Program-made: the position numbers and the translations under genes
IMG/VR virus record: IMGVR_UViG_3300023179_000009
Coordinates: 62,001-126,000 of that record
Direction: 5' to 3' (one strand)
DNA: 64,000 nucleotides
Notes under the pieces: model-generated
Databases searched by the model: none
What the model was told of the DNA's origin: nothing
The model's input: only the letters and a program-made list of their open reading frames with translations
In this document: in pieces, positions 50,624 through 61,907 of the stretch
Layout of the letters: each line of letters opens with the position of its first letter
How positions within the stretch are numbered: the first letter of the stretch is position 1

Positions 50624-52228
50624 ATGAACAAGTCTAAAATGATGAGCGGATCTCCTATCTTAACGGGAGATAATAATATTCCAGGATTAAAGATTCACAA
50701 AGAAGTCTTAAAAGTCCTTCCACAAATAGAAGAATCTTGTCACAAGATGGGCTTAGATTATTTTCCCATTATTGTTGAGTTTGTAAGATATGACGAAATG
50801 GCTGAACTAGCCAGCTACGGAGGGTTTCCTGTTCGCTATCCTCATTGGCGATTTGGCATGGAATATGAAGAGATGGCTCGTGGTTATGAACACGGTCAAT
50901 ATCGTATATCAGAAATGGTGATCAACGCCTGCCCCTGTTACATATATTGCATGGATTCAAATACTTTAGTTGATAATGTTGATGTTATTGCACACGCTAT
51001 TGGTCATAATGATTTTTTTAAGAATAACATCTTTTTTGAGCCAACAGACGAGAATATGATGAACAAGTTGGCAAATCACGGCACAAGGATTAGAAAATAC
51101 ATGGCTCGTTGGGGACACGAAGTCGTAACAGAATTTATAGATCATTGTTTAAGGCTAGATACTTTAATCGATCCTCACCGGGCTTGGCAAAAAAAGAAGA
51201 TCAAACAATCGGTTGTTCGTGATGAAAGAAAATATCAACATCCCAAGCGGCTAAAATCACAAAATAACTATATGGACGAATGGGTCAACAGCAAAGATTA
51301 TATTGATCAACAAAATGAAGATATTAAAAAACAAGAAACGGCCCACTTTCTTGATATTTTTGAGGGATCTTGCAAGGACATTCTTGGTTACTTAAAGGAC
51401 AACGCTCCTTTAAAACCTTGGCAACAAGATATTATTTCTATGCTTTACGATGAAGCAATGTATTTTAGCCCACAACGTGCAACTAAAATGATCAATGAAG
51501 GTTGGGCTAGTTTTGTAGATTACCACATCCTATGTAGGATGGGATTGGCATCATTAGGTCAACCTAGCGAAGATGCCGGTATTTGGCACTACGCAGAACA
51601 CAAAATGAGAGTTCTTGGCGGAAAATATAGTCAAAATCCTTATAAACTTGGTTTTGAATTATTTTTAGACATAGAAGATCGATGGAATAAAGGAAAATTT
51701 GGCGATGATTGGGAAAATTGCAATAACATGCACGAAAAAGAAAATTGGGATAAAAAATTAGGTTTGGGGATGGATAAAATTTTTGAGGTAAGAAAAAATT
51801 ATAATGACTTTCTTATGATTCAAGAATTCTTTACACCCGAATTTTGTGAAAAGAAACAATTTTTTGAATGGAAACATTTTCCTAATGGCGAATATAAAAT
51901 TGTAAATCGTGACTTTAAAAGTATTAAAAAGAAATTATTACAAAAATACTTAAACGCAGGTCTTCCCGATATACGTCTTTTAGACCCCAATCATTTGGGC
52001 AAAGGTTGGTTTTATATGGAACACCAATCAGACGGTAGAACTCTTTATGATAGTTACGCTCGTGAAACTATCACATCTATACAAAAAATTTGGAAAAATG
52101 TTGTGGTTTTGTCCACTAAAAATAAAGATGGAGTCGAGTGCGTTTATGTTTGTGACGGGTCTCAACAAGATAAAAATGTTCATTATATGACTAGAGAAGA
52201 ATATGAAAAAGAATTCCTAAATAATTGA
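50624..52228 (+). CDS. spoVR: SpoVR/YcgB family protein
   Basis: YPHWRFG, EMVIN.CPC, AHAIGHNDFF, TKMINEGWAS, NPYKLG. Confidence 0.93.
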   Translation: MNKSKMMSGSPILTGDNNIPGLKIHKEVLKVLPQIEESCHKMGLDYFPIIVEFVRYDEMAELASYGGFPVRYPHWRFGMEYEEMARGYEHGQYRISEMVINACPCYIYCMDSNTLVDNVDVIAHAIGHNDFFKNNIFFEPTDENMMNKLANHGTRIRKYMARWGHEVVTEFIDHCLRLDTLIDPHRAWQKKKIKQSVVRDERKYQHPKRLKSQNNYMDEWVNSKDYIDQQNEDIKKQETAHFLDIFEGSCKDILGYLKDNAPLKPWQQDIISMLYDEAMYFSPQRATKMINEGWASFVDYHILCRMGLASLGQPSEDAGIWHYAEHKMRVLGGKYSQNPYKLGFELFLDIEDRWNKGKFGDDWENCNNMHEKENWDKKLGLGMDKIFEVRKNYNDFLMIQEFFTPEFCEKKQFFEWKHFPNGEYKIVNRDFKSIKKKLLQKYLNAGLPDIRLLDPNHLGKGWFYMEHQSDGRTLYDSYARETITSIQKIWKNVVVLSTKNKDGVECVYVCDGSQQDKNVHYMTREEYEKEFLNN

Positions 52229-54137: not shown

Positions 54138-54674
54138 GTGAAAAATAAAAGATTTAGTCATAGTCTTAAACAAAAGTACGATTTGCTCGGTAAAAAATTA
54201 GCCGCTGAAATAATGCAAGACATTGTTAAGGCAAAGTTAATCACAGATAATCTTAAAGAAGATTCTGGCGACTTCACAGACGGTTTTTGGGACCAAAAAT
54301 ATCGTCTTCCCAGTGGCAAAGAATTAAAAGTTGAGCCAGAGATGAAAGATGAAAAGTGGTGGGGAAATCAATGGTCTTCTTCAAGGCCATTTCGATATGA
54401 AGACATGGATATTCCCTTTAGAAAAGCAAAAAATCAAGCACACCTTCACATCGTTATCAGTACTTGTGAGAATTTTGCTTTTTTACTTACTAGAGATGCC
54501 ATGAATGAAGCTCTTGAAGAATCTGGCGGAATGCCTAAGATTAAGAAAACAATTTATGAACCTAACGGTGCGGCCTACTTTAGCACCCCAGTAAATAAAG
54601 GTTATTTTGTTTACAGGAAAAAAGATGGTCGTTGGGCTAAGTGGAAAAAATTAGCAAAGGAATTAGTTAAATGA
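54138..54674 (+). CDS. Hypothetical protein
   Basis: 178 aa, SD AAGGAG. Confidence 0.65.
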   Translation: MKNKRFSHSLKQKYDLLGKKLAAEIMQDIVKAKLITDNLKEDSGDFTDGFWDQKYRLPSGKELKVEPEMKDEKWWGNQWSSSRPFRYEDMDIPFRKAKNQAHLHIVISTCENFAFLLTRDAMNEALEESGGMPKIKKTIYEPNGAAYFSTPVNKGYFVYRKKDGRWAKWKKLAKELVK

Positions 54675-55753
54675 GGATACAAAATGAGATTTGTTTAGAC
54701 TATTCAGATGTTTTGATTTGTCCAAAAAGAAGCGAGTCTCCGAGTAGAAAAAATGTAATTTTAAAAAGAAAATTTACATTTTTGAACTCAAAACAAACTT
54801 GGGAAGGTGTTCCTTTGGTGGCAGCAAACATGTCAACCATAGGCACGTTTGCGATGGCTAAAGTGTTTAATAAACATGGCATGAAGGTTTGTTTACACAA
54901 ACACTACACAGTTGAGCAATTAGTTGATTTTTTTAAAGACAATCAAGCTTTTTACACACTTGGCATTAAAGATTTTGATTTTGAAAAATTAAATCATTTT
55001 GTAAATCAGCATGGTCAGCCTCCTAAGTATATTTGCTTAGATGTTGCAAACGGTTATACAAAGTTTTTTGTTGAAAAATGCAGACAAATCAGAGATAATT
55101 TTCCAGAATCGGTTTTGATGGCCGGAAATGTTTGCACTCCAGAAATGGTTCAAGAACTTCTTCTTTCTGGTGGCGTGGATATTGTTAAAATTGGTATTGG
55201 CGGCGGGTCTGCATGCACCACAAGATTGGTAGCCGGTGTGGGAGTACCCCAATTCACGGCTGTGACAGAATGTGCGGATGCCGCACATGGATTAAGAGGT
55301 CACATTGTGGCCGATGGTGGTTGCGTAACATCTGGTGATGTGGCGAAGGCATTTGGTGGTGGTGCTGATTTTGTGATGCTTGGCGGCATGTTAAGCGGAC
55401 ACGAAGAGTGCGAAGGAGATTGGGAATACGAGTGGAAAACACAATCGGGTTTTTTTCAACCAATAGATCCTGGGTACCCTACCGAAAAGAAAAAGAAGAC
55501 TTTGCTTTTTTATGGCATGAGCAGCAAAGAAGCCATGGAAAAGTTTAATGGAGGTCAATCTGGCTATCGAGCTAGTGAAGGAAGATCAGTTCGTGTACCC
55601 TATAGAGGATTTGTGGAAGATACTCTTCTTGAAATAATGGGTGGAGTTCGAAGTGCTTGCACTTATGTCGGGACAGAGAGTTTGAAAGATTTTAGTAAGT
55701 GTTGTACATTTGTTCGAGTCAACAACACCCACAACAAGGTTTTTGAAAAATGA
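54671..55753 (+). CDS. guaC: GMP reductase
   Basis: LDYSDVLI, DVANGY, KIGIGGGSACTTR, ADGG, RSACTYVG; no CBS domains. Confidence 0.93.
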   Translation: MRIQNEICLDYSDVLICPKRSESPSRKNVILKRKFTFLNSKQTWEGVPLVAANMSTIGTFAMAKVFNKHGMKVCLHKHYTVEQLVDFFKDNQAFYTLGIKDFDFEKLNHFVNQHGQPPKYICLDVANGYTKFFVEKCRQIRDNFPESVLMAGNVCTPEMVQELLLSGGVDIVKIGIGGGSACTTRLVAGVGVPQFTAVTECADAAHGLRGHIVADGGCVTSGDVAKAFGGGADFVMLGGMLSGHEECEGDWEYEWKTQSGFFQPIDPGYPTEKKKKTLLFYGMSSKEAMEKFNGGQSGYRASEGRSVRVPYRGFVEDTLLEIMGGVRSACTYVGTESLKDFSKCCTFVRVNNTHNKVFEK

Positions 55754-56215: not shown

Positions 56216-59043
56216 TTGGAAACTACAGGATACGAAAACCTTCATAGACATAGCGATTTTAGCCTCAAAATTTAGGGGCCTTAATGACGAAAGTCATTAA
56301 GCAAACTGGATGAATTCGGGGAAGCCCTAACGTAAAGACGAGGGTAATCCCGAGCCAAGCATGTAATGCATTACATGAAGGTGTAGAGACTACTGGCGAG
56401 GTTTAGCCCTCTTAATTACCAGCAAGAGCGTCCAGCACCCCTAGGGGTGATGATATAGTCCACTCCACAAGAAACTGTGGGCAAAAGTGCTTAGACGGGT
56501 TTGCAAAAGTATCTGAATATGCCGAGTATCAAAAGCAAATAAATCAAAAGTATTTGTGTATCACCGATCATGGTGTGATGGGGGCTATTCCACAACAAGT
56601 TGCAGAATCTGAAAAACATAATTTATATCCTTTGTTTGGATGTGAACTTTATGTTAATCCGATGCAACCAAAAGTTTCTTCACGATCAGAGTCGGCGGAG
56701 TTTCGTAAATCTTTAGAAGATGAAGCAACGCAAAAAAAGTTTGATAAATCTTATCATTTATTGGCCATAGCCTACAATGATGAGGGTTATTCTAATCTTG
56801 TTCGTTTAACTTCTTGGGGCTGGATACACGGCTTCTATAGAAAGCCTAGGGTAAATCATGAAGCACTCATGAAATATAAAGAAGGAATTGTGTTCACCTC
56901 CGCCTGTGCCAACTCAGAAATAGCAAGAGCTTTTTTTGATGGTGGCGACGAGGCTGGCTTCGCCATGTTGGAAAAATATATGGCTATGTTTGGTGAGCAT
57001 TTTTATCTTGAACTTATGATGCTCGATTTTAAAGATCAAAAGCCTTATGATGCTTTTTTAATTCGTGCTCATGATAAGTATCATGTTCCGCTGACAATGA
57101 GCACCGATTGTTTTGTTAAAGGCACTTTGGTTCTAACTAATTTTGGTTTCAAAAATATCGAAGAAATTAAAGTTGGCGATAAGGTTTTTACTCATAAAAA
57201 CAGGTGGAGGTTAGTTGAACATGTTGGATCACGTTCACTAAGATCAAATGAAAAAATTTACCGTGTATCAACTAGTGCTGGTACATTTGCTTATGAAGCT
57301 ACGGGCAATCACGAAGTATATGTGGCCACTTATGAAAAAAATAAATGGAACTTTGATTGGGTAAGAACAGACGGATTGAAATCAAAAGAACACCACCTCA
57401 CAGTTCCTAAGATAAGTGAATCTAAAGTTTTCTCCGAAAAGGATTTAAGCGAAATAGATATTTTGTCCTTCTTGAAAAAAGAAGATTTTCAAGAAGGAAC
57501 AGACTACAAATCATCCAGAAAAGGCAACATGGGTTGCCGCCTTCAGTTCAACAGGGACACTCAAGAATTTTGGTCTTATCGTGGTTGGGATAGAAAATTT
57601 AGAACCACTATTCCCAGAATGTTAAAGGTAGATGATGATTTTGTTAAAATGTTGGGATGGTATATCGCTGAAGGTTGGAGTGAAAAAAATAGCAATCAGG
57701 TGGGTTTTGCTTTTCACATAGAAGAAAAACATGTAGCTGAGTGGTTAATTTCTTATTTTTCACGTTTTGATATTATTGCAAAGATTTATAAGGTCTCTGA
57801 GAACGGTATAGCAATTCGTTTTTCTTCAGTTGTCTTTAATCGTCTTTTGGGTCAAATGTGTGGTTTTGGTGCTAAAAACAAACATCTACCGAAGCCCAAC
57901 AATCAAGTTTGGCTAAAGATGTGGTCGAAAAGACAACTTTCTATGATTATTCGTGAGTATTGGCGTGGCGATGGGGGCAACGCTGCAAATAATGATGGTT
58001 TTATTTTCACATCCACATCTAAAATTTTAATACAAGAGATCGCTTTTGTTTTTAATTCTTGTGGTGTTTTTTCTTTACCTTGTGAAGAAAAAAATAGAAA
58101 AGATACATGGAATACCAAAAAATATATATCCTACACGGGAGGAAGAGGCGATCAAGTGTTGTCTTTTTTAACGAATGGAGATTGTAAGCCTTTTTTGCAC
58201 AAGGAAGTAATTGAATTTAAAGATTATTATTTGGTGCCAATCAAAGAAATCACTGCTCTTAAACACCAAGAACAAGAAGTTCACTGTTTTCAGGTAAAGG
58301 ACGATCATTCGTTCACTGCTAATCTTTACGCTGTGAGTAACTGCCACTACTGTCTTAAAGAGCAAAGTCATAATCAACGTCTTATGCTCATGCAGCAAAA
58401 CAAAAGAACGCTTGCTGAGATGGAGGCACTTGTAGAATCCGGCCAAGCAGAGGATCTATTTGAACTACAAGACACAAATCTATGGCTGAAGAGTGAGGAT
58501 GAACTAAATGAAATGTGGGAAGAAAAATTTCAAGATGTTATCGATTATGAACTTTTCAAACAATCCAAAGCAAACACAGTCAAGATTGCAGAGTTTGCCA
58601 AAGGCGTACAAATCAATAAAGAAATAAAACTTCCTAAAATAAATGACGCAGATGCACTTTTGTGGGAAGAAATCAAAAAAGGTTTTATGAAGCGTGGTTG
58701 TCCTAGAACTCCTGTTTATATAAAGCGAATCCGTGAAGAATACGATCTAATTTCAGAGAAGGGCTTTTCTAGTTACTTTTTAATTCAAAAAATGATGGTG
58801 GATGAAGCTCGAAGGAAGAGTCCAGAGATATTAGGTTTTGGAGACGGATCAGAAGCCGTTGGTCCTGGTAGAGGTTCGGTTGCTGGCTCTTTGGTTGCCT
58901 ATTGTCTTCGTCTTCATGATGTGGAGCCAATATTCCACGATTTGAGATTTAGTCGTTTTCTAAGTCCAGCACGTGGTGGCAAGCAAATGAAAATTCGCCA
59001 CACAATAGACCCAATATCTCATGAATCAATCAATTTGGATTAA
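56216..59043 (+). CDS. dnaE: DNA polymerase III alpha, N-terminal part only (PHP plus start of palm); exons 56216-56265 and 56490-59043; contains intein
   Basis: TTG start after AGGAGA; spliced HRHSDFSLLDG, TDHG, GCE, STD|CHY, GPGRGSVAGSLVAY, RFSRFLSPAR then stop. Confidence 0.9.
56266..56489 (+). ncRNA. Group I intron (224 nt, no ORF) in dnaE
   Basis: P GAATTCGGGGAA, Q AATCCCGAGC, R GTAGAGACTA (56383), S GATATAGTCC (56452); U.G in P1, terminal G; removal restores the frame. Confidence 0.92.
57109..58341 (+). mobile_element. Intein with LAGLIDADG endonuclease (411 aa) in DnaE PHP domain
   Basis: CFVKGTLVLT...VGDKV, ATGNHEV, MLGWYIAEG, REYWRGDG, ...AVSN|C. Confidence 0.93.
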
Positions 59044-59936
59044 TATCTGTTCATCATTCTTCGCATATATGATTTCATCAATGCTTTTTGCAAATTGTGA
59101 ACAGCGGGATGATCTTTAAACATTTCGGGATTCATTTCGGGCATTTGGTCATCTTTTTCCATTGAGGCTTCCATGTCCTCATCTTCCATGCCTTCCATGT
59201 CCTCATCTTCCATGCCTTCCATGTCCTCATCTCCCATGCCTTCCATGTCCTCATCTTCCATGCCTTCCATGTCCTCATCTTCCATGCCTTCCATGTCCTC
59301 ATCTTCCATGCCTTCCATGTCCTCATCTCCCATGCCTTCCATGTCCTCATCTTCCATGCCTTCCATGTCCTCATCTTCTTCATCGTGATCAACTTGGTCA
59401 TCATCATGATCTTCTTGGCTTAGTTGATTGTGAAAAGGAGCGGCAACTTCTTCGTTCATGGCTCTTGCCAACTTGTTACACATGTCTGGTCCGTATGATT
59501 CGTGGGCCATAACCTCAGAGATGTGTTTGTAGGTTTCACGGTGATTCAAACACTCTGCCACAAGACAGCCTAGTAAACCACTCTGTTTTAGGTTTCTTAC
59601 TAAAGTTTCAATAATAACAGGGTTTTTAGAAGAGGCTTTTGTTACTTTTGATAAAAGAGCAGACTCCTCAACAGTAGGCAATTTGACAGATTTTTTTTCA
59701 TTATTTGCTTCTTGAGTTTTTGGCTCATAAACCAACTCGTCATCGCCTTCGCCTGCTAATCCTTTTGATGAATTTTTTTTACCCTTGGTTGTTTTAGCAA
59801 CATAAGGAGATTTGCCACCTTCTGGGCGATCAGGTGAGGTTGATGGGTCCACATTATCTCCATCGTTGCATACCTTGGGCTTGTCTTGTAATTTTCCTTT
59901 AGAATCCAAGTATTCATCAAATTTCATAAAAGCCAT
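59040..59936 (-). CDS. Acidic repeat protein, capsid-targeting-like N-terminus
   Basis: MAFMKFDEYLD; EDEDMEGM repeats; SD GAGG. Confidence 0.75.
   Translation of the reverse strand: MAFMKFDEYLDSKGKLQDKPKVCNDGDNVDPSTSPDRPEGGKSPYVAKTTKGKKNSSKGLAGEGDDELVYEPKTQEANNEKKSVKLPTVEESALLSKVTKASSKNPVIIETLVRNLKQSGLLGCLVAECLNHRETYKHISEVMAHESYGPDMCNKLARAMNEEVAAPFHNQLSQEDHDDDQVDHDEEDEDMEGMEDEDMEGMGDEDMEGMEDEDMEGMEDEDMEGMEDEDMEGMGDEDMEGMEDEDMEGMEDEDMEASMEKDDQMPEMNPEMFKDHPAVHNLQKALMKSYMRRMMNRY
59169..59378 (-). repeat. 24-bp coding tandem repeat, 8.75 units
   Basis: EDEDMEGM units; GDEDMEGM variant at units 3 and 7. Confidence 0.95.
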
Positions 59937-60117: not shown

Positions 60118-60174
60118 AAAACACCTTTTGTGTTATTATTTAGTAGTTTAATTGTTTTTTTGAGGAGAATATTT

Positions 60175-60786
60175 TTGGATCAAAAAAAAGATTTAAATTG
60201 GGAAACTGCTTCTTTGGATATGGAGCAAAAAAATTACCGAGGAGAAACTGGCAAATCTCGTAATAGAAGATTAAAAGAAAACTGGTTTGAAAAGTTTGCT
60301 CCTGAAAACCAAACAGGTATTGATATTGGTTGTAACGATGATCCTTTAAATGAAACTTTTCGACGTTATGATGTGATTTTCGGAGATGGAGATGCCACTA
60401 ATATGGTGGGTGTTCCAGACAACGTCTTTCATACCGTGTATGCAAGTCATGTTTTGGAACATCTTCAATTTCCCCAAAAAGCAATACGCAGGTGGTATCA
60501 AATTTTAAAACCTGGAGGCCACTTGATAATCGTTGTTCCCCACCGTGATTTGTATGAAAAAAAACGATTTCCTCCAAGCAATTGGAATCCAGAACACAAA
60601 TATTTTTGGCTACCAGAAGACGAAGACCCGCCAGCAACAAAAAATTTGAAAAAAGAAGTTCTTTTGGCAATACCAAATGCTAACATAGTCCAGTTTAGGG
60701 TTTTAGATGACGGTTATGATTATTCTCTTGAAAACAACGAACACGCTATAGGAGAATTTTCGATAGAGTGTATTGTAAAAAAATAA
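60175..60786 (+). CDS. Class I SAM-dependent methyltransferase
   Basis: GIDIGC, GDAT, YASHVLEH, LKPGGHL; TTG start after GAGGAG. Confidence 0.85.
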   Translation: MDQKKDLNWETASLDMEQKNYRGETGKSRNRRLKENWFEKFAPENQTGIDIGCNDDPLNETFRRYDVIFGDGDATNMVGVPDNVFHTVYASHVLEHLQFPQKAIRRWYQILKPGGHLIIVVPHRDLYEKKRFPPSNWNPEHKYFWLPEDEDPPATKNLKKEVLLAIPNANIVQFRVLDDGYDYSLENNEHAIGEFSIECIVKK

Positions 60787-60788
60787 TT

Positions 60789-60816
60789 TTTACTTTCTGC
60801 CTTTTAGGTGTATAAT
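60789..60816 (+). promoter_or_regulatory. tmRNA promoter TTTACT-N16-TATAAT
   Basis: -10 box ends 9 nt before tmRNA G1. Confidence 0.65.
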
Positions 60817-60825
60817 TACTGAGTT

Positions 60826-61417
60826 GGGGTCGTAAAGGTATCGATTGGATAACGAGAGACTCAATGGCAAGTCGAGGTTGGTCAATGGCCTCGTTAAAAA
60901 TTGACCAAAGCCTTAACTGGCAAAAATAGTTACGCAATGGCTGCTTGATAAAAAGAGCAACCACGGACTGCGAATGCGAGCGGGTAGCATTCAAAAGTTC
61001 GTTGTCAAATCCCGCTGGACTAGTGCGGTCAACTTGCGTCTAGTCGAGAAAATAGGTTGAAAAGTCCGTCAGGAATCCTGTTCGTTGGAGTCTCGGCGGT
61101 CTGATAAAAAACGAAACAAACTTGTAGAGGTTGTTTTTCAAATTATCGCAAGACAGGGGTTCAGGTCGAGCCGTCAATAAATGAAAGTTTATTGATTATG
61201 ATTGGATGAATTCGGTGAAACCTTAACGAGTAAAGTCGAAGGCAATACCGAGCCAAGCCCAAGATACATCTTGGGAAGGTGTAGAGACTACTAGAGGAAT
61301 AAAGTTTCCTTAATAACTAGCATGAGCGTCCAACGCCTAAAACCGCAAGGTTATGGTGAACATATAGTCCATTAACTAAGAAATTAGTTGGGGAAATATC
61401 GACTCCCCTCGACTCCA
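60826..61417 (+). ncRNA. ssrA: tmRNA, intron-containing; tag (A)GKNSYAMAA
   Basis: Acceptor stem GGGGUCG/CGACUCC-A with G3.U70; TTAACT then ORF 60919-60948 and tandem stops; spliced T-arm AGGGG-UUCGACU-CCCCU. Confidence 0.93.
61161..61398 (+). ncRNA. Group I intron (238 nt, no ORF) in tmRNA T-loop
   Basis: P GAATTCGGTGAA, Q AATACCGAGC, R GTAGAGACTA (61281), S CATATAGTCC (61361); guide GGUCGA-GCC pairs both exons. Confidence 0.9.
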
Positions 61418-61420
61418 CTA

Positions 61421-61452
61421 AAAAGAGAGGAAGAAATTCCTCTCTTTTTTTT
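61421..61452. terminator. Bidirectional terminator after tmRNA
   Basis: AAAAGAGAGGAA-GAAA-TTCCTCTCTTTT. Confidence 0.85.
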
Positions 61453-61454
61453 GT

Positions 61455-61907
61455 CTAAAGTTTTCTTCTTTGTAGAGGAGAAGGAAGCACAAATCCTTTT
61501 CCATCAAGATCTGCCGAACCCGGCAATGCTACAATTGAATCTTGTTGGAACCAATTGGCCAAATACAACAAAACTGGAGTTAGTACTTCTTGCCATGTGA
61601 ATATTGGCGATTTCACCAACCAAATCCTATAAGCCTTCACAGATAATTCACAGACACCTGATATGTTAAATATGCCCGTAATGAATGGGTGTTTTGTTAA
61701 ACTTGTTTCGTAGTCTTCTTTATCTATTGCTGTTTGGTAAATTGGGGGTATTTGTCGTATGTGAATGTAAGCCGCACTATCCGATCTTGTGTTTTCATCT
61801 TGGTTAAATTCGATTCGATAACGCAAAGGGTATTGGTTGTAAGACGGCGACTCGCCACCAATTTGAACACCAAATCCAACTAAAATTTCTTCGTTAAATG
61901 TTGCCAT
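61455..61907 (-). CDS. Hypothetical, Nfu/NifU N-terminal-like segment
   Basis: IFNISGVCELSV...LVK...WQEV pattern. Confidence 0.45.
   Translation of the reverse strand: MATFNEEILVGFGVQIGGESPSYNQYPLRYRIEFNQDENTRSDSAAYIHIRQIPPIYQTAIDKEDYETSLTKHPFITGIFNISGVCELSVKAYRIWLVKSPIFTWQEVLTPVLLYLANWFQQDSIVALPGSADLDGKGFVLPSPLQRRKL

What the first reader, a model, noticed from the sequence alone, without database searches (positions are those of the whole stretch)
61161..61398. Phage tmRNA T-loop group I intron that appears to end in A (omega-A), not G
Seen: the internal guide A-GGUCGA-GCC pairs the 5' exon (GGU, with the U.G wobble at 61160) and the 3' exon UCGACU, and only this junction rebuilds a T-arm (AGGGG-UUCGACU-CCCCU). 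The last intron base is then A61398. P9.0 agrees (AU after P7 pairs with AU before it), and the P7-to-terminus segment is 28 nt in both this intron and the dnaE intron, where the aligned base is G. The P7 G-binding G-C pair is canonical. Established: terminal G is nearly invariant because it occupies the G site in step 2; T-loop group I introns in tmRNA genes have been reported, so the site itself is not new. Inference: either a natural omega-A ribozyme or a slow/stalled splice that gates phage trans-translation.
Basis: partly seen in the sequence, partly recalled or inferred. Interest (0 to 1): 0.9.

Follow-up and report, generated by a model that had tools for sequence, protein, structure and literature searches.

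The report
Phage tmRNA intron ending in A

Summary
Rfam finds a tmRNA (60834-61168) running into a group I intron (61151-61390). Intron-less relatives in other phage contigs fix the mature T-arm as AGGGG-UUCGACU-CCCCU. Only the junction U61160|U61399 combines three things: the conserved U.G wobble in P1, a 6-bp P10 directly next to P1, and a 3-bp P9.0 just before the last intron base. That base is A61398.

A sister intron in this phage's dnaE gene has the same 28-nt tail, and its reading frame places a G at the aligned position. Scans that did not constrain the tail found six distinct intron-bearing phage tmRNA genes. Five end in A and one (L212) ends in G in the same column, so the A is neither a sequencing error nor a mis-placed splice site.

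The five A-ending introns keep the ribozyme fold through 20 compensatory pair changes. Their exons keep covarying acceptor stems and intact tags, so they very probably still splice. The G-binding pair in P7 and its surroundings are unchanged.

Splicing itself, and any "gating" role, are untested. A natural non-G terminus has one published precedent (Coxiella burnetii 23S rRNA intron, 2007). I file this as a new variant of a known kind, interest about 0.6.

The parts
60789..60816 (+). Sigma-70-like promoter (TTTACT, 16 nt spacer, TATAAT) about 10 nt upstream of the tmRNA 5' end
   Evidence: Consensus scan, 10 of 12 matches. Pattern match only.
60826..61160 (+). tmRNA 5' exon: acceptor 5' strand GGGGUCG (60826-60832), pseudoknot body, T-stem 5' strand AGGGG (61155-61159) and first T-loop base U61160
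   Evidence: Rfam RF00023, 82.7 bits. ARAGORN calls a tmRNA once the exons are joined.
60919..60951 (+). Tag reading frame GKNSYAMAA followed by two stops
   Evidence: ARAGORN on joined exons. Homologues carry DEVSYAMAA, DEVSYSMAA, DETVYALAA, GNTLALAA and a longer ...AVAIAA tag.
61161..61398 (+). Group I intron, 238 nt, with a P7.1 extension between P7 and P3' (subgroup IA type)
   Evidence: Rfam RF00028, 65.5 bits. Boundaries come from intron-less relatives, P1/P10/P9.0 and the homologue alignment.
61164..61172 (+). Internal guide sequence: 61170-61172 pair with the 5' exon (P1, wobble G61170); 61164-61169 pair with the 3' exon (P10)
   Evidence: Pair tables. P10 is 4-6 bp in all six tmRNA introns, with G.U and A-U alternating at the last pair.
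61284..61290 (+). P7 5' strand, including the G-binding G61286 and the bulged A61285
   Evidence: Pairs with 61365-61370. All six P7 pairs are invariant in seven introns.
61365..61370 (+). P7 3' strand, including C61369, the partner of G61286
61371..61373 (+). P9.0 5' strand (AUU)
   Evidence: Pairs with 61395-61397. The middle pair is U-A here and C-G in the dnaE intron.
61374..61389 (+). P9 hairpin (6 bp, GAAA loop)
   Evidence: Compensatory changes in L009, L206, L203 and dnaE. Absent from L047.
61390..61393 (+). Invariant GGGG in the 3' tail; it can pair with the T-stem 3' strand CCCC (61405-61408)
   Evidence: Conserved in all six introns. The hairpin appears in the minimum-free-energy fold of the 3' region. 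Its role is inferred, with no covariation available.
61395..61397 (+). P9.0 3' strand (AAU)
61398..61398 (+). Last intron base (omega position) = A
   Evidence: A in the window, L009, L206, L203 and L047; G in L212 and in the dnaE intron at the same alignment column.
61399..61417 (+). tmRNA 3' exon: T-loop bases 2-7 UCGACU, T-stem 3' strand CCCCU, acceptor 3' strand CGACUCC and discriminator A
   Evidence: Identical to the 3' end of the intron-less phage tmRNAs L008 and L010-L014. The acceptor stem covaries among homologues.
61420..61452 (+). Intrinsic terminator-like hairpin with a U tract directly after the tmRNA
56266..56489 (+). Comparator: sister group I intron in dnaE, ending in G56489
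   Evidence: Rfam RF00028, 98.4 bits. Exon junction fixed by the reading frame. 65% identical to the tmRNA intron with the same tail layout.

Best explanation
A 238-nt subgroup-IA-type group I intron interrupts the T-loop of a tmRNA gene in a 459-kb phage contig, between the first and second loop bases (equivalent to tRNA positions 54/55). It belongs to a small family of phage tmRNA introns in which the terminal (omega) base is A in five lineages and G in one. Most likely it still self-splices at exactly this site. Guanosine attacks after U61160, which is held in P1 by the U.G wobble. For exon ligation the 3' splice site is then placed mainly by an unusually long P10 (UCGACU with GGUCGA), a 3-bp P9.0 that ends one base before the terminus, and possibly a GGGG:CCCC clamp onto the T-stem strand. 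A61398 occupies an unaltered G-binding pocket poorly. The second step is therefore probably slower than in the G-ending relative, but fast enough to yield a functional tmRNA. Shown here: the sequence anatomy, the homologous G in relatives, and conservation of the fold and of the exons. Inferred: that splicing occurs, that the helices compensate for the A, and the effect on rate.
For: The site is fixed in four ways. Intron-less relatives read ...GGACAGGGGU|UCGACUCCCCUCGACUCCA. Candidate 61398 is the only one with P9.0 3/3, P10 6/6 and a 7-nt T-loop. The tail has the same 28-nt layout as the dnaE intron, whose terminal G is fixed by the reading frame. L212 has G in the same column, directly before UCGACU. 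The A is real and persistent: five distinct sequences from different metagenomes are 71-86% identical to each other over the intron, and they were found with patterns that left the tail free. The fold is maintained. Among the five A-ending introns alone, 97% of cells pair and 20 pairs carry compensatory double changes, with 0/500 shuffles reaching that value. With L212 and dnaE added there are 32 such pairs. The host gene is maintained. Acceptor stems covary (GGGGUCG/CGACUCC; GGGGCCG/CGGCUCC; GGGGUUG/CAACUCC) with the third-position G.U kept, the T-stem closing pair changes A-U to C-G in L047, and all six tags end in ..AA. The joined exons are called as a tmRNA by ARAGORN and the unspliced gene is not. 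A promoter-like site and a terminator flank the gene. A precedent for a natural non-G terminus that splices exists: the Coxiella burnetii 23S intron paper title; the details are from my own knowledge.
Against: No RNA data exist, so splicing is inferred only from conservation. With a canonical G-C binding pair, laboratory G-to-A changes at this position in model introns strongly impair exon ligation (my own knowledge of the Tetrahymena work; the single G-site mechanism is described in PMC2588497). No compensating change is seen in P7, J6/7 or J8/7 between the A-ending and G-ending family members. The intron tree is unresolved, so I cannot say whether A arose once or several times, nor how long it has persisted in any one line. 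Conservation of one base over this amount of divergence does not by itself prove selection for A. P10 is only 4 bp in L009.
Confidence: 0.7

Rival explanations
1. The A terminus cripples exon ligation. The intron carries out the first step (or nothing), so the phage tmRNA is made rarely, is non-functional, or works as two pieces nicked in the T-loop.
For: The G-binding pair is canonical and nothing in the core compensates for the A. The terminal G is the rule in all 883 bacterial tmRNA introns surveyed (PMC11915505).
Against: Five diverged lineages keep the ribozyme fold through compensatory changes. They also keep the tmRNA acceptor stem, T-arm and tag intact. A dead intron in a dead gene should decay instead. 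Intron-less alleles exist in related phages, so a crippled allele could be replaced.
Confidence: 0.12
2. A G is used as the terminus after all, at G61393 (leaving AAAUA in an enlarged T-loop) or at G61401 with a 5' splice site after A61163 (T-loop UUCAACU).
For: Both candidates satisfy the terminal-G rule. UUCAACU is a legal T-loop. An automatic scoring of -1 and omega of the kind described in bioRxiv 10.1101/2020.01.27.920355 would prefer the second.
Against: Neither candidate has P10 or a full P9.0: 61393 scores 2/3 and 0 consecutive pairs, 61401 scores 1/3 and 0. The G61393 option would give T-loops of 11-12 nt whose length differs between homologues (tails AAAUA versus AAUA). The G61401 option needs A, U or G at -1 in different homologues, abandons the invariant U.G wobble, and would put U at T-loop position 4 in L212. 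L212 has a G exactly at the column of A61398.
Confidence: 0.07
3. The A is exploited. A deliberately slow second step, or one dependent on a cofactor or condition, times or gates production of phage tmRNA during infection.
For: A persists in five lineages, although a single transition to G should speed ligation and a G allele exists. Nothing else supports it.
Against: There is no evidence of regulation. The pattern (both A and G present, tree unresolved) fits near-neutral tolerance equally well. The intron carries no extra domain or ORF that could sense anything.
Confidence: 0.1
4. Sequencing or assembly error at 61398.
For: None beyond the rarity of the feature.
Against: The same base is seen in five independent assemblies from different samples. 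The window is identical in the IMG/VR and JGI copies of the contig.
Confidence: 0.01

Closest known systems
Group I introns in the T-loop of bacterial tmRNA genes (Williams 2002; 883 sequences at four T-loop subsites in PMC11915505)
   Same: Same host gene, the same loop and the same logic: the T-loop U provides the -1 U.G wobble. This intron sits at their rare subsite 2 (after the first loop base). It is short and has no homing endonuclease gene, like most of theirs.
   Different: Those all obey the terminal-G rule; five of the six here do not. These are in phage contigs (a 459-kb one here), whereas subsite 2 was reported only from Anaerolineae and one Myxococcota. I found no paper describing an intron in a phage tmRNA, but the search covers only open-access text.
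Coxiella burnetii 23S rRNA intron Cbu.L1917 ('lacks the canonical omegaG', Raghavan et al. 2007, J Bacteriol 189:6572)
   Same: A natural group I intron whose last base is not G and which is nevertheless reported to splice. From my own knowledge the base is A and splicing was shown in vitro and in vivo. Only the title could be checked here.
   Different: It is an unrelated intron (reported as subgroup IB2 in rRNA; PMC10136302) in a single species. Here there is a family with five diverged A-ending members and a G-ending sister that shares the same core.
Sister intron in this phage's dnaE gene (56266-56489) and related phage IA introns
   Same: 65-72% identical, with an identical P7 and the same P7 / P9.0 / P9 / 9-nt tail layout.
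   Different: It ends in G, its P10 is weak (2+2 bp by my hand reading), and it interrupts a protein-coding gene.
Engineered omega and G-site variants of the Tetrahymena intron (own knowledge: Michel 1989; Been and Perrotta 1991)
   Same: A at the terminus.
   Different: In those experiments A was tolerated only when the G-C binding pair was changed to A-U. Here the binding pair stays G-C.

Membership tests
Group I intron (Rfam RF00028) | Covariance-model score above the curated threshold | tested here: met
   65.5 bits against a gathering score of 50, full-length model match.
Group I intron (Rfam RF00028) | Conserved P1-P9 fold including the P3/P7 pseudoknot, supported by covariation | tested here: met
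   70 pairs, 94% of cells paired, 32 pairs with double changes, 0/500 shuffles; slid controls give 34-45% paired.
Group I intron (Rfam RF00028) | U at -1 forming a U.G wobble in P1 | tested here: met
   U61160.G61170, invariant in all seven introns.
Group I intron (Rfam RF00028) | G-binding G-C pair in P7 next to a bulged base | tested here: met
   G61286-C61369 with bulged A61285, invariant. The equivalence to Tetrahymena G264-C311 is from my own knowledge.
Group I intron (Rfam RF00028) | Terminal G (omega G) | tested here: not met
   A61398. A in five homologues, G in L212 and dnaE at the same column. The Rfam model's final G aligns to G61390, which is not the splice site.
Group I intron (Rfam RF00028) | Self-splicing with guanosine | not testable with these tools
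   Needs in vitro transcription and splicing, or RNA reads.
Subgroup IA | Extra P7.1/P7.2 helices between P7 and P3' | tested here: met
   Helices 61291-61294/61317-61320 and 61295-61299/61306-61310, with compensatory changes. IA2 versus IA3 was not resolved.
tmRNA (Rfam RF00023) | Model score; acceptor stem with G.U at the third pair; tag reading frame; T-arm | tested here: met
   82.7 bits. GGGGUCG/CGACUCC with G3.U, tag GKNSYAMAA**, and a 5-bp T-stem with a 7-nt loop after joining the exons.
tmRNA T-loop intron class (PMC11915505) | Intron inside the T-loop whose removal restores the loop | tested here: met
   The joined exons equal the sequence of intron-less relatives. The site is subsite 2.
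tmRNA T-loop intron class (PMC11915505) | Boundaries that obey -1 U (or C) and terminal G | tested here: not met
   -1 is U but the terminus is A. No boundary satisfies both rules and also restores UUCGACU.

The most novel reading that the evidence does not exclude
In this intron family the identity of the terminal base has become nearly dispensable. The 3' splice site is held by a long P10, a 3-bp P9.0 and a GGGG:CCCC clamp onto the T-stem strand, so that A (five lineages) and G (one lineage) both work with an unchanged G-binding pocket. This would be a natural, near-isogenic pair for asking what the terminal G really contributes to the second step. It is also possible that the slow A form is used to time tmRNA maturation during infection.
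Probability: 0.3. Interest if true: 0.8.

Novelty: new variant of a known kind. Interest (0 to 1): 0.6.

Why it matters
The terminal G is one of the two boundary rules used both to explain group I catalysis (it refills the single guanosine site for exon ligation) and to annotate introns automatically. Here a whole family breaks the rule while keeping the G pocket intact, and it includes a G-ending member with the same core. That gives ribozyme biochemists a ready-made natural comparison. It also warns annotators that rule-based mapping will mis-place or miss such introns: ARAGORN misses this tmRNA altogether. Finally, it appears to add phage-encoded tmRNA genes to the hosts of T-loop introns.

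Tried and rejected
1. The exact 5' junction pattern in viral contigs found only the window's own contig plus GC-rich chance hits.
2. blastn against GenBank phages found only short core matches to other phage introns and no tmRNA homologue.
3. Core-motif scans returned about 190 loci of related introns in other genes. nhmmer picked out only L009 and L047 as tmRNA-borne.
4. The relaxed 3' pattern gave no new family member. L221 holds two unrelated introns and no tmRNA.
5. L198-L200, L202 and L204 matched the metagenome pattern but have no RNA family hit and were dropped.
6. A maximum-likelihood tree meant to polarise the A/G change was unresolved.
7. Alternative junctions were rejected (and the homologue comparison).
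8. The Coxiella papers (PMC2045182, PMC2519523, PMC3187410, PMC2926257) are not held, so details of that precedent rest on the title and my memory.
9. Literature searches for other non-G termini found nothing further.
10. The supplementary alignment of PMC11915505 is not held as text, so I could not compare with the bacterial subsite-2 introns.
11. The ORF next to the gene (61455-61907, minus strand) has no family hit, so no homing endonuclease could be assigned in the window.

Full report
WHAT IS THERE. The window is part of a 458,813-bp phage contig; the IMG/VR and JGI copies are identical over the region. Rfam finds a tmRNA at 60834-61168 (82.7 bits) that breaks off inside its T-arm. It overlaps a group I intron at 61151-61390 (65.5 bits). 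A second group I intron lies at 56256-56481. ARAGORN sees no tmRNA in the raw window.

The gene has a promoter-like site ending at 60816 and a terminator hairpin at 61420-61452. The 5' acceptor strand GGGGUCG starts at 60826. The matching strand CGACUCC lies at 61410-61416 and keeps the G.U third pair. The tag frame reads GKNSYAMAA with two stops.

WHERE THE EXONS JOIN. A scan for the 3' exon sequence found intron-less tmRNA genes in six other phage contigs (L008, L010-L014). They read ...GGACAGGGGU UCGACU CCCCU CGACUCC A. The mature T-arm must therefore be AGGGG-UUCGACU-CCCCU. Joining window 60826-61160 to 61399 onward gives a sequence that ARAGORN accepts as a tmRNA with a 5-bp T-stem and a 7-nt loop.

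Because the intron begins UC and the 3' exon begins UC, three adjacent junctions give the same product. A fourth (A61163|A61402) gives UUCAACU.

The ribozyme's own helices decide between them. The Rfam alignment and all homologues place the invariant U.G wobble at U61160.G61170. The six guide bases just 5' of G61170 pair with U61399-U61404 (P10, 6/6). The three bases after P7 (61371-61373) pair with 61395-61397 (P9.0). In a table of all candidate 3' sites from 61384 to 61412, only 61398 has P9.0 3/3, P10 6/6 and a 7-nt loop. No G in the region has either helix.

INDEPENDENT CHECK FROM THE SISTER INTRON. The dnaE intron of the same phage is 65% identical to the tmRNA intron. Its borders are fixed by the protein: the exons read HSDFS|LLDGFAK, so it runs 56266-56489 and ends in G.

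Its tail has the same plan: P7, three P9.0 bases, a 6-bp P9 with a GAAA-type loop, then nine bases, 28 nt in all. Its terminal G aligns with A61398. The middle P9.0 pair is C-G there and U-A here, a compensatory difference.

HOMOLOGUES. Scans were keyed on the P7 strand plus the 3' exon with the tail left free (metagenomes; viral contigs), on the 5' junction and on the P3-P4 core (viral and genome collections). They gave six distinct intron-bearing tmRNA genes: the window, L009, L206, L203 (=L219), L047 (=L205) and L212.

The tails before UCGACU are as follows:
- window and L009: GGGGAAAUA
- L206: GGGGGAAUA
- L203 and L047: GGGGAAUA
- L212: GGGGAAAAG

So A is present in five lineages, which are 71-86% identical to each other over the intron, and G in one at the same column. 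L212 comes from an 11-kb contig binned as a Neisseriaceae MAG. It carries phage DNA polymerase and endonuclease genes, including an HNH endonuclease ORF directly after the tmRNA. L047 lacks P9 altogether, so its P9.0 is a small hairpin that ends one base before the terminus.

These data exclude a sequencing error. The G in L212 shows that this column really is the omega position.

IS THE INTRON STILL A RIBOZYME AND THE GENE STILL A GENE? On the seven-intron alignment, 94% of cells pair and 32 of 70 pairs show double changes (0/500 shuffles; partners slid by 1-3 columns give 34-45% paired). Restricting to the five A-ending introns still gives 97% paired and 20 pairs with double changes.

The exons behave as functional tmRNA. 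The acceptor stems covary (GGGGUCG/CGACUCC; GGGGCCG/CGGCUCC; GGGGUUG/CAACUCC). The T-stem closing pair switches A-U to C-G in L047. All six tags end in the usual ..AA. This pattern is hard to reconcile with an intron that cannot be removed.

WHAT DOES NOT CHANGE. P7, with the G-binding pair G61286-C61369 and the bulged A, is identical in all seven introns. J6/7 and J8/7 show no difference that tracks with A versus G: L212 has the same J8/7 as L009, L206 and L047. The pocket is therefore still built for guanosine, as the first step requires (mechanism: PMC2588497). The A must be tolerated rather than specifically recognised.

What is unusual around it is the strength of the positioning helices. 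P10 is 4-6 bp in the tmRNA introns, against a weak 2+2 bp in dnaE (my reading). P9.0 is 3 bp in the A-ending members, and one of those pairs is lost in the G-ending L212. An invariant GGGG (61390-61393) can pair with the T-stem strand CCCC just beyond P10. That these features compensate for the A is my inference. The GGGG:CCCC pairing has no covariation to test.

HISTORY. An ML tree (last three bases removed, dnaE and other phage introns included) leaves L212, dnaE, L203, L047 and the window/L009/L206 group in an unresolved fork. Either A arose once and was kept while the lineages diverged, with one change back to G, or it arose more than once. Both readings imply tolerance. Neither proves selection for A.

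COMPARISON WITH WHAT IS KNOWN. T-loop introns in tmRNA genes have been known since 2002. A 2025 survey lists 883 at four subsites, all with a terminal G and all in cellular genomes. Subsite 2, the one used here, is confined to Anaerolineae and one Myxococcota (PMC11915505). The present family breaks the terminal-G rule and sits in phage tmRNA genes; I found no report of that.

A natural intron without the terminal G is not unprecedented. A 2007 paper on Coxiella burnetii 23S rRNA says so in its title. From memory, the base is A and the intron splices in vitro and in vivo, but the paper is not held, so I could not check it. That case is a single unrelated intron. Here there is a diverged family plus a G-ending sister with the same core.

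VERDICT. The functional interpretation is open but leans towards a working A-ending ribozyme (0.7). The gating idea is untested (0.1). I rate this a new variant of a known kind. Interest is 0.6: a specialist would be surprised by a conserved A terminus with an intact G pocket, and the A/G pair makes the contribution of the terminal G directly testable, but the phenomenon has a precedent and no RNA evidence exists yet.

Noticed in passing
window 56217-59043: The dnaE gene carries the group I intron 56266-56489 and an intein with Hint and LAGLIDADG domains (about aa 186-591 of ORF 56554-59043). The ORF then stops at 59043, right after ...RFLSPARGG and before the expected polymerase catalytic motif, so a third interruption or a split gene is likely. 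The minus-strand ORF 59040-59936 has no family hit.
   Followed up: partly
window 61399-61406 and 61409-61416: A direct repeat TCGACTCC (T-loop/T-stem versus acceptor strand) creates a second perfect 6-bp partner for the guide sequence at 61409-61414. It has no P9.0 and is not conserved in L203, L047 or L212.
   Followed up: yes
window 61390-61393 with 61405-61408: GGGG in the intron tail is invariant in all six tmRNA introns. It is predicted to pair with the T-stem 3' strand CCCC, forming a helix that would stack on P10. No covariation is available to test this.
   Followed up: partly
L212:725-1246 and L212:1801-6014: The G-ending homologue has an HNH endonuclease ORF immediately after the tmRNA and a DNA polymerase gene split by another endonuclease ORF. 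The contig looks like phage DNA although it is labelled a Neisseriaceae MAG. The endonuclease could drive spread of the intron.
   Followed up: partly
L047:13117-13323 (minus strand): This family member is only 207 nt and lacks P9 entirely. P9.0 becomes a 3-bp hairpin with loop UGGGG, a very compact 3' end for a group I intron.
   Followed up: partly
L008, L010-L014: Intron-less tmRNA genes with the same T-arm and acceptor end occur in other phage contigs of 33-381 kb, several next to tRNA genes. The intron is therefore present or absent among related phage tmRNA genes. The intron is also better conserved than its host gene: the L212 intron scores 174 bits against the window's, while the tmRNA body barely matches.
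   Followed up: partly
window 60826-61417: ARAGORN does not report this tmRNA because of the intron, and Rfam's intron model ends at G61390, eight bases short of the true end. Standard annotation would miss the gene or mis-place the boundary.
   Followed up: yes
L221:132-907 (minus strand): Two group I introns lie about 300 nt apart in an unrelated viral contig. One is followed by TCGAATCCCC, but no tmRNA is detected there.
   Followed up: partly
window 50624-52228 and 54671-55753: The phage encodes a SpoVR-like protein and an IMP dehydrogenase/GMP reductase family protein. A methyltransferase gene (60130-60786) lies directly upstream of the tmRNA.
   Followed up: no
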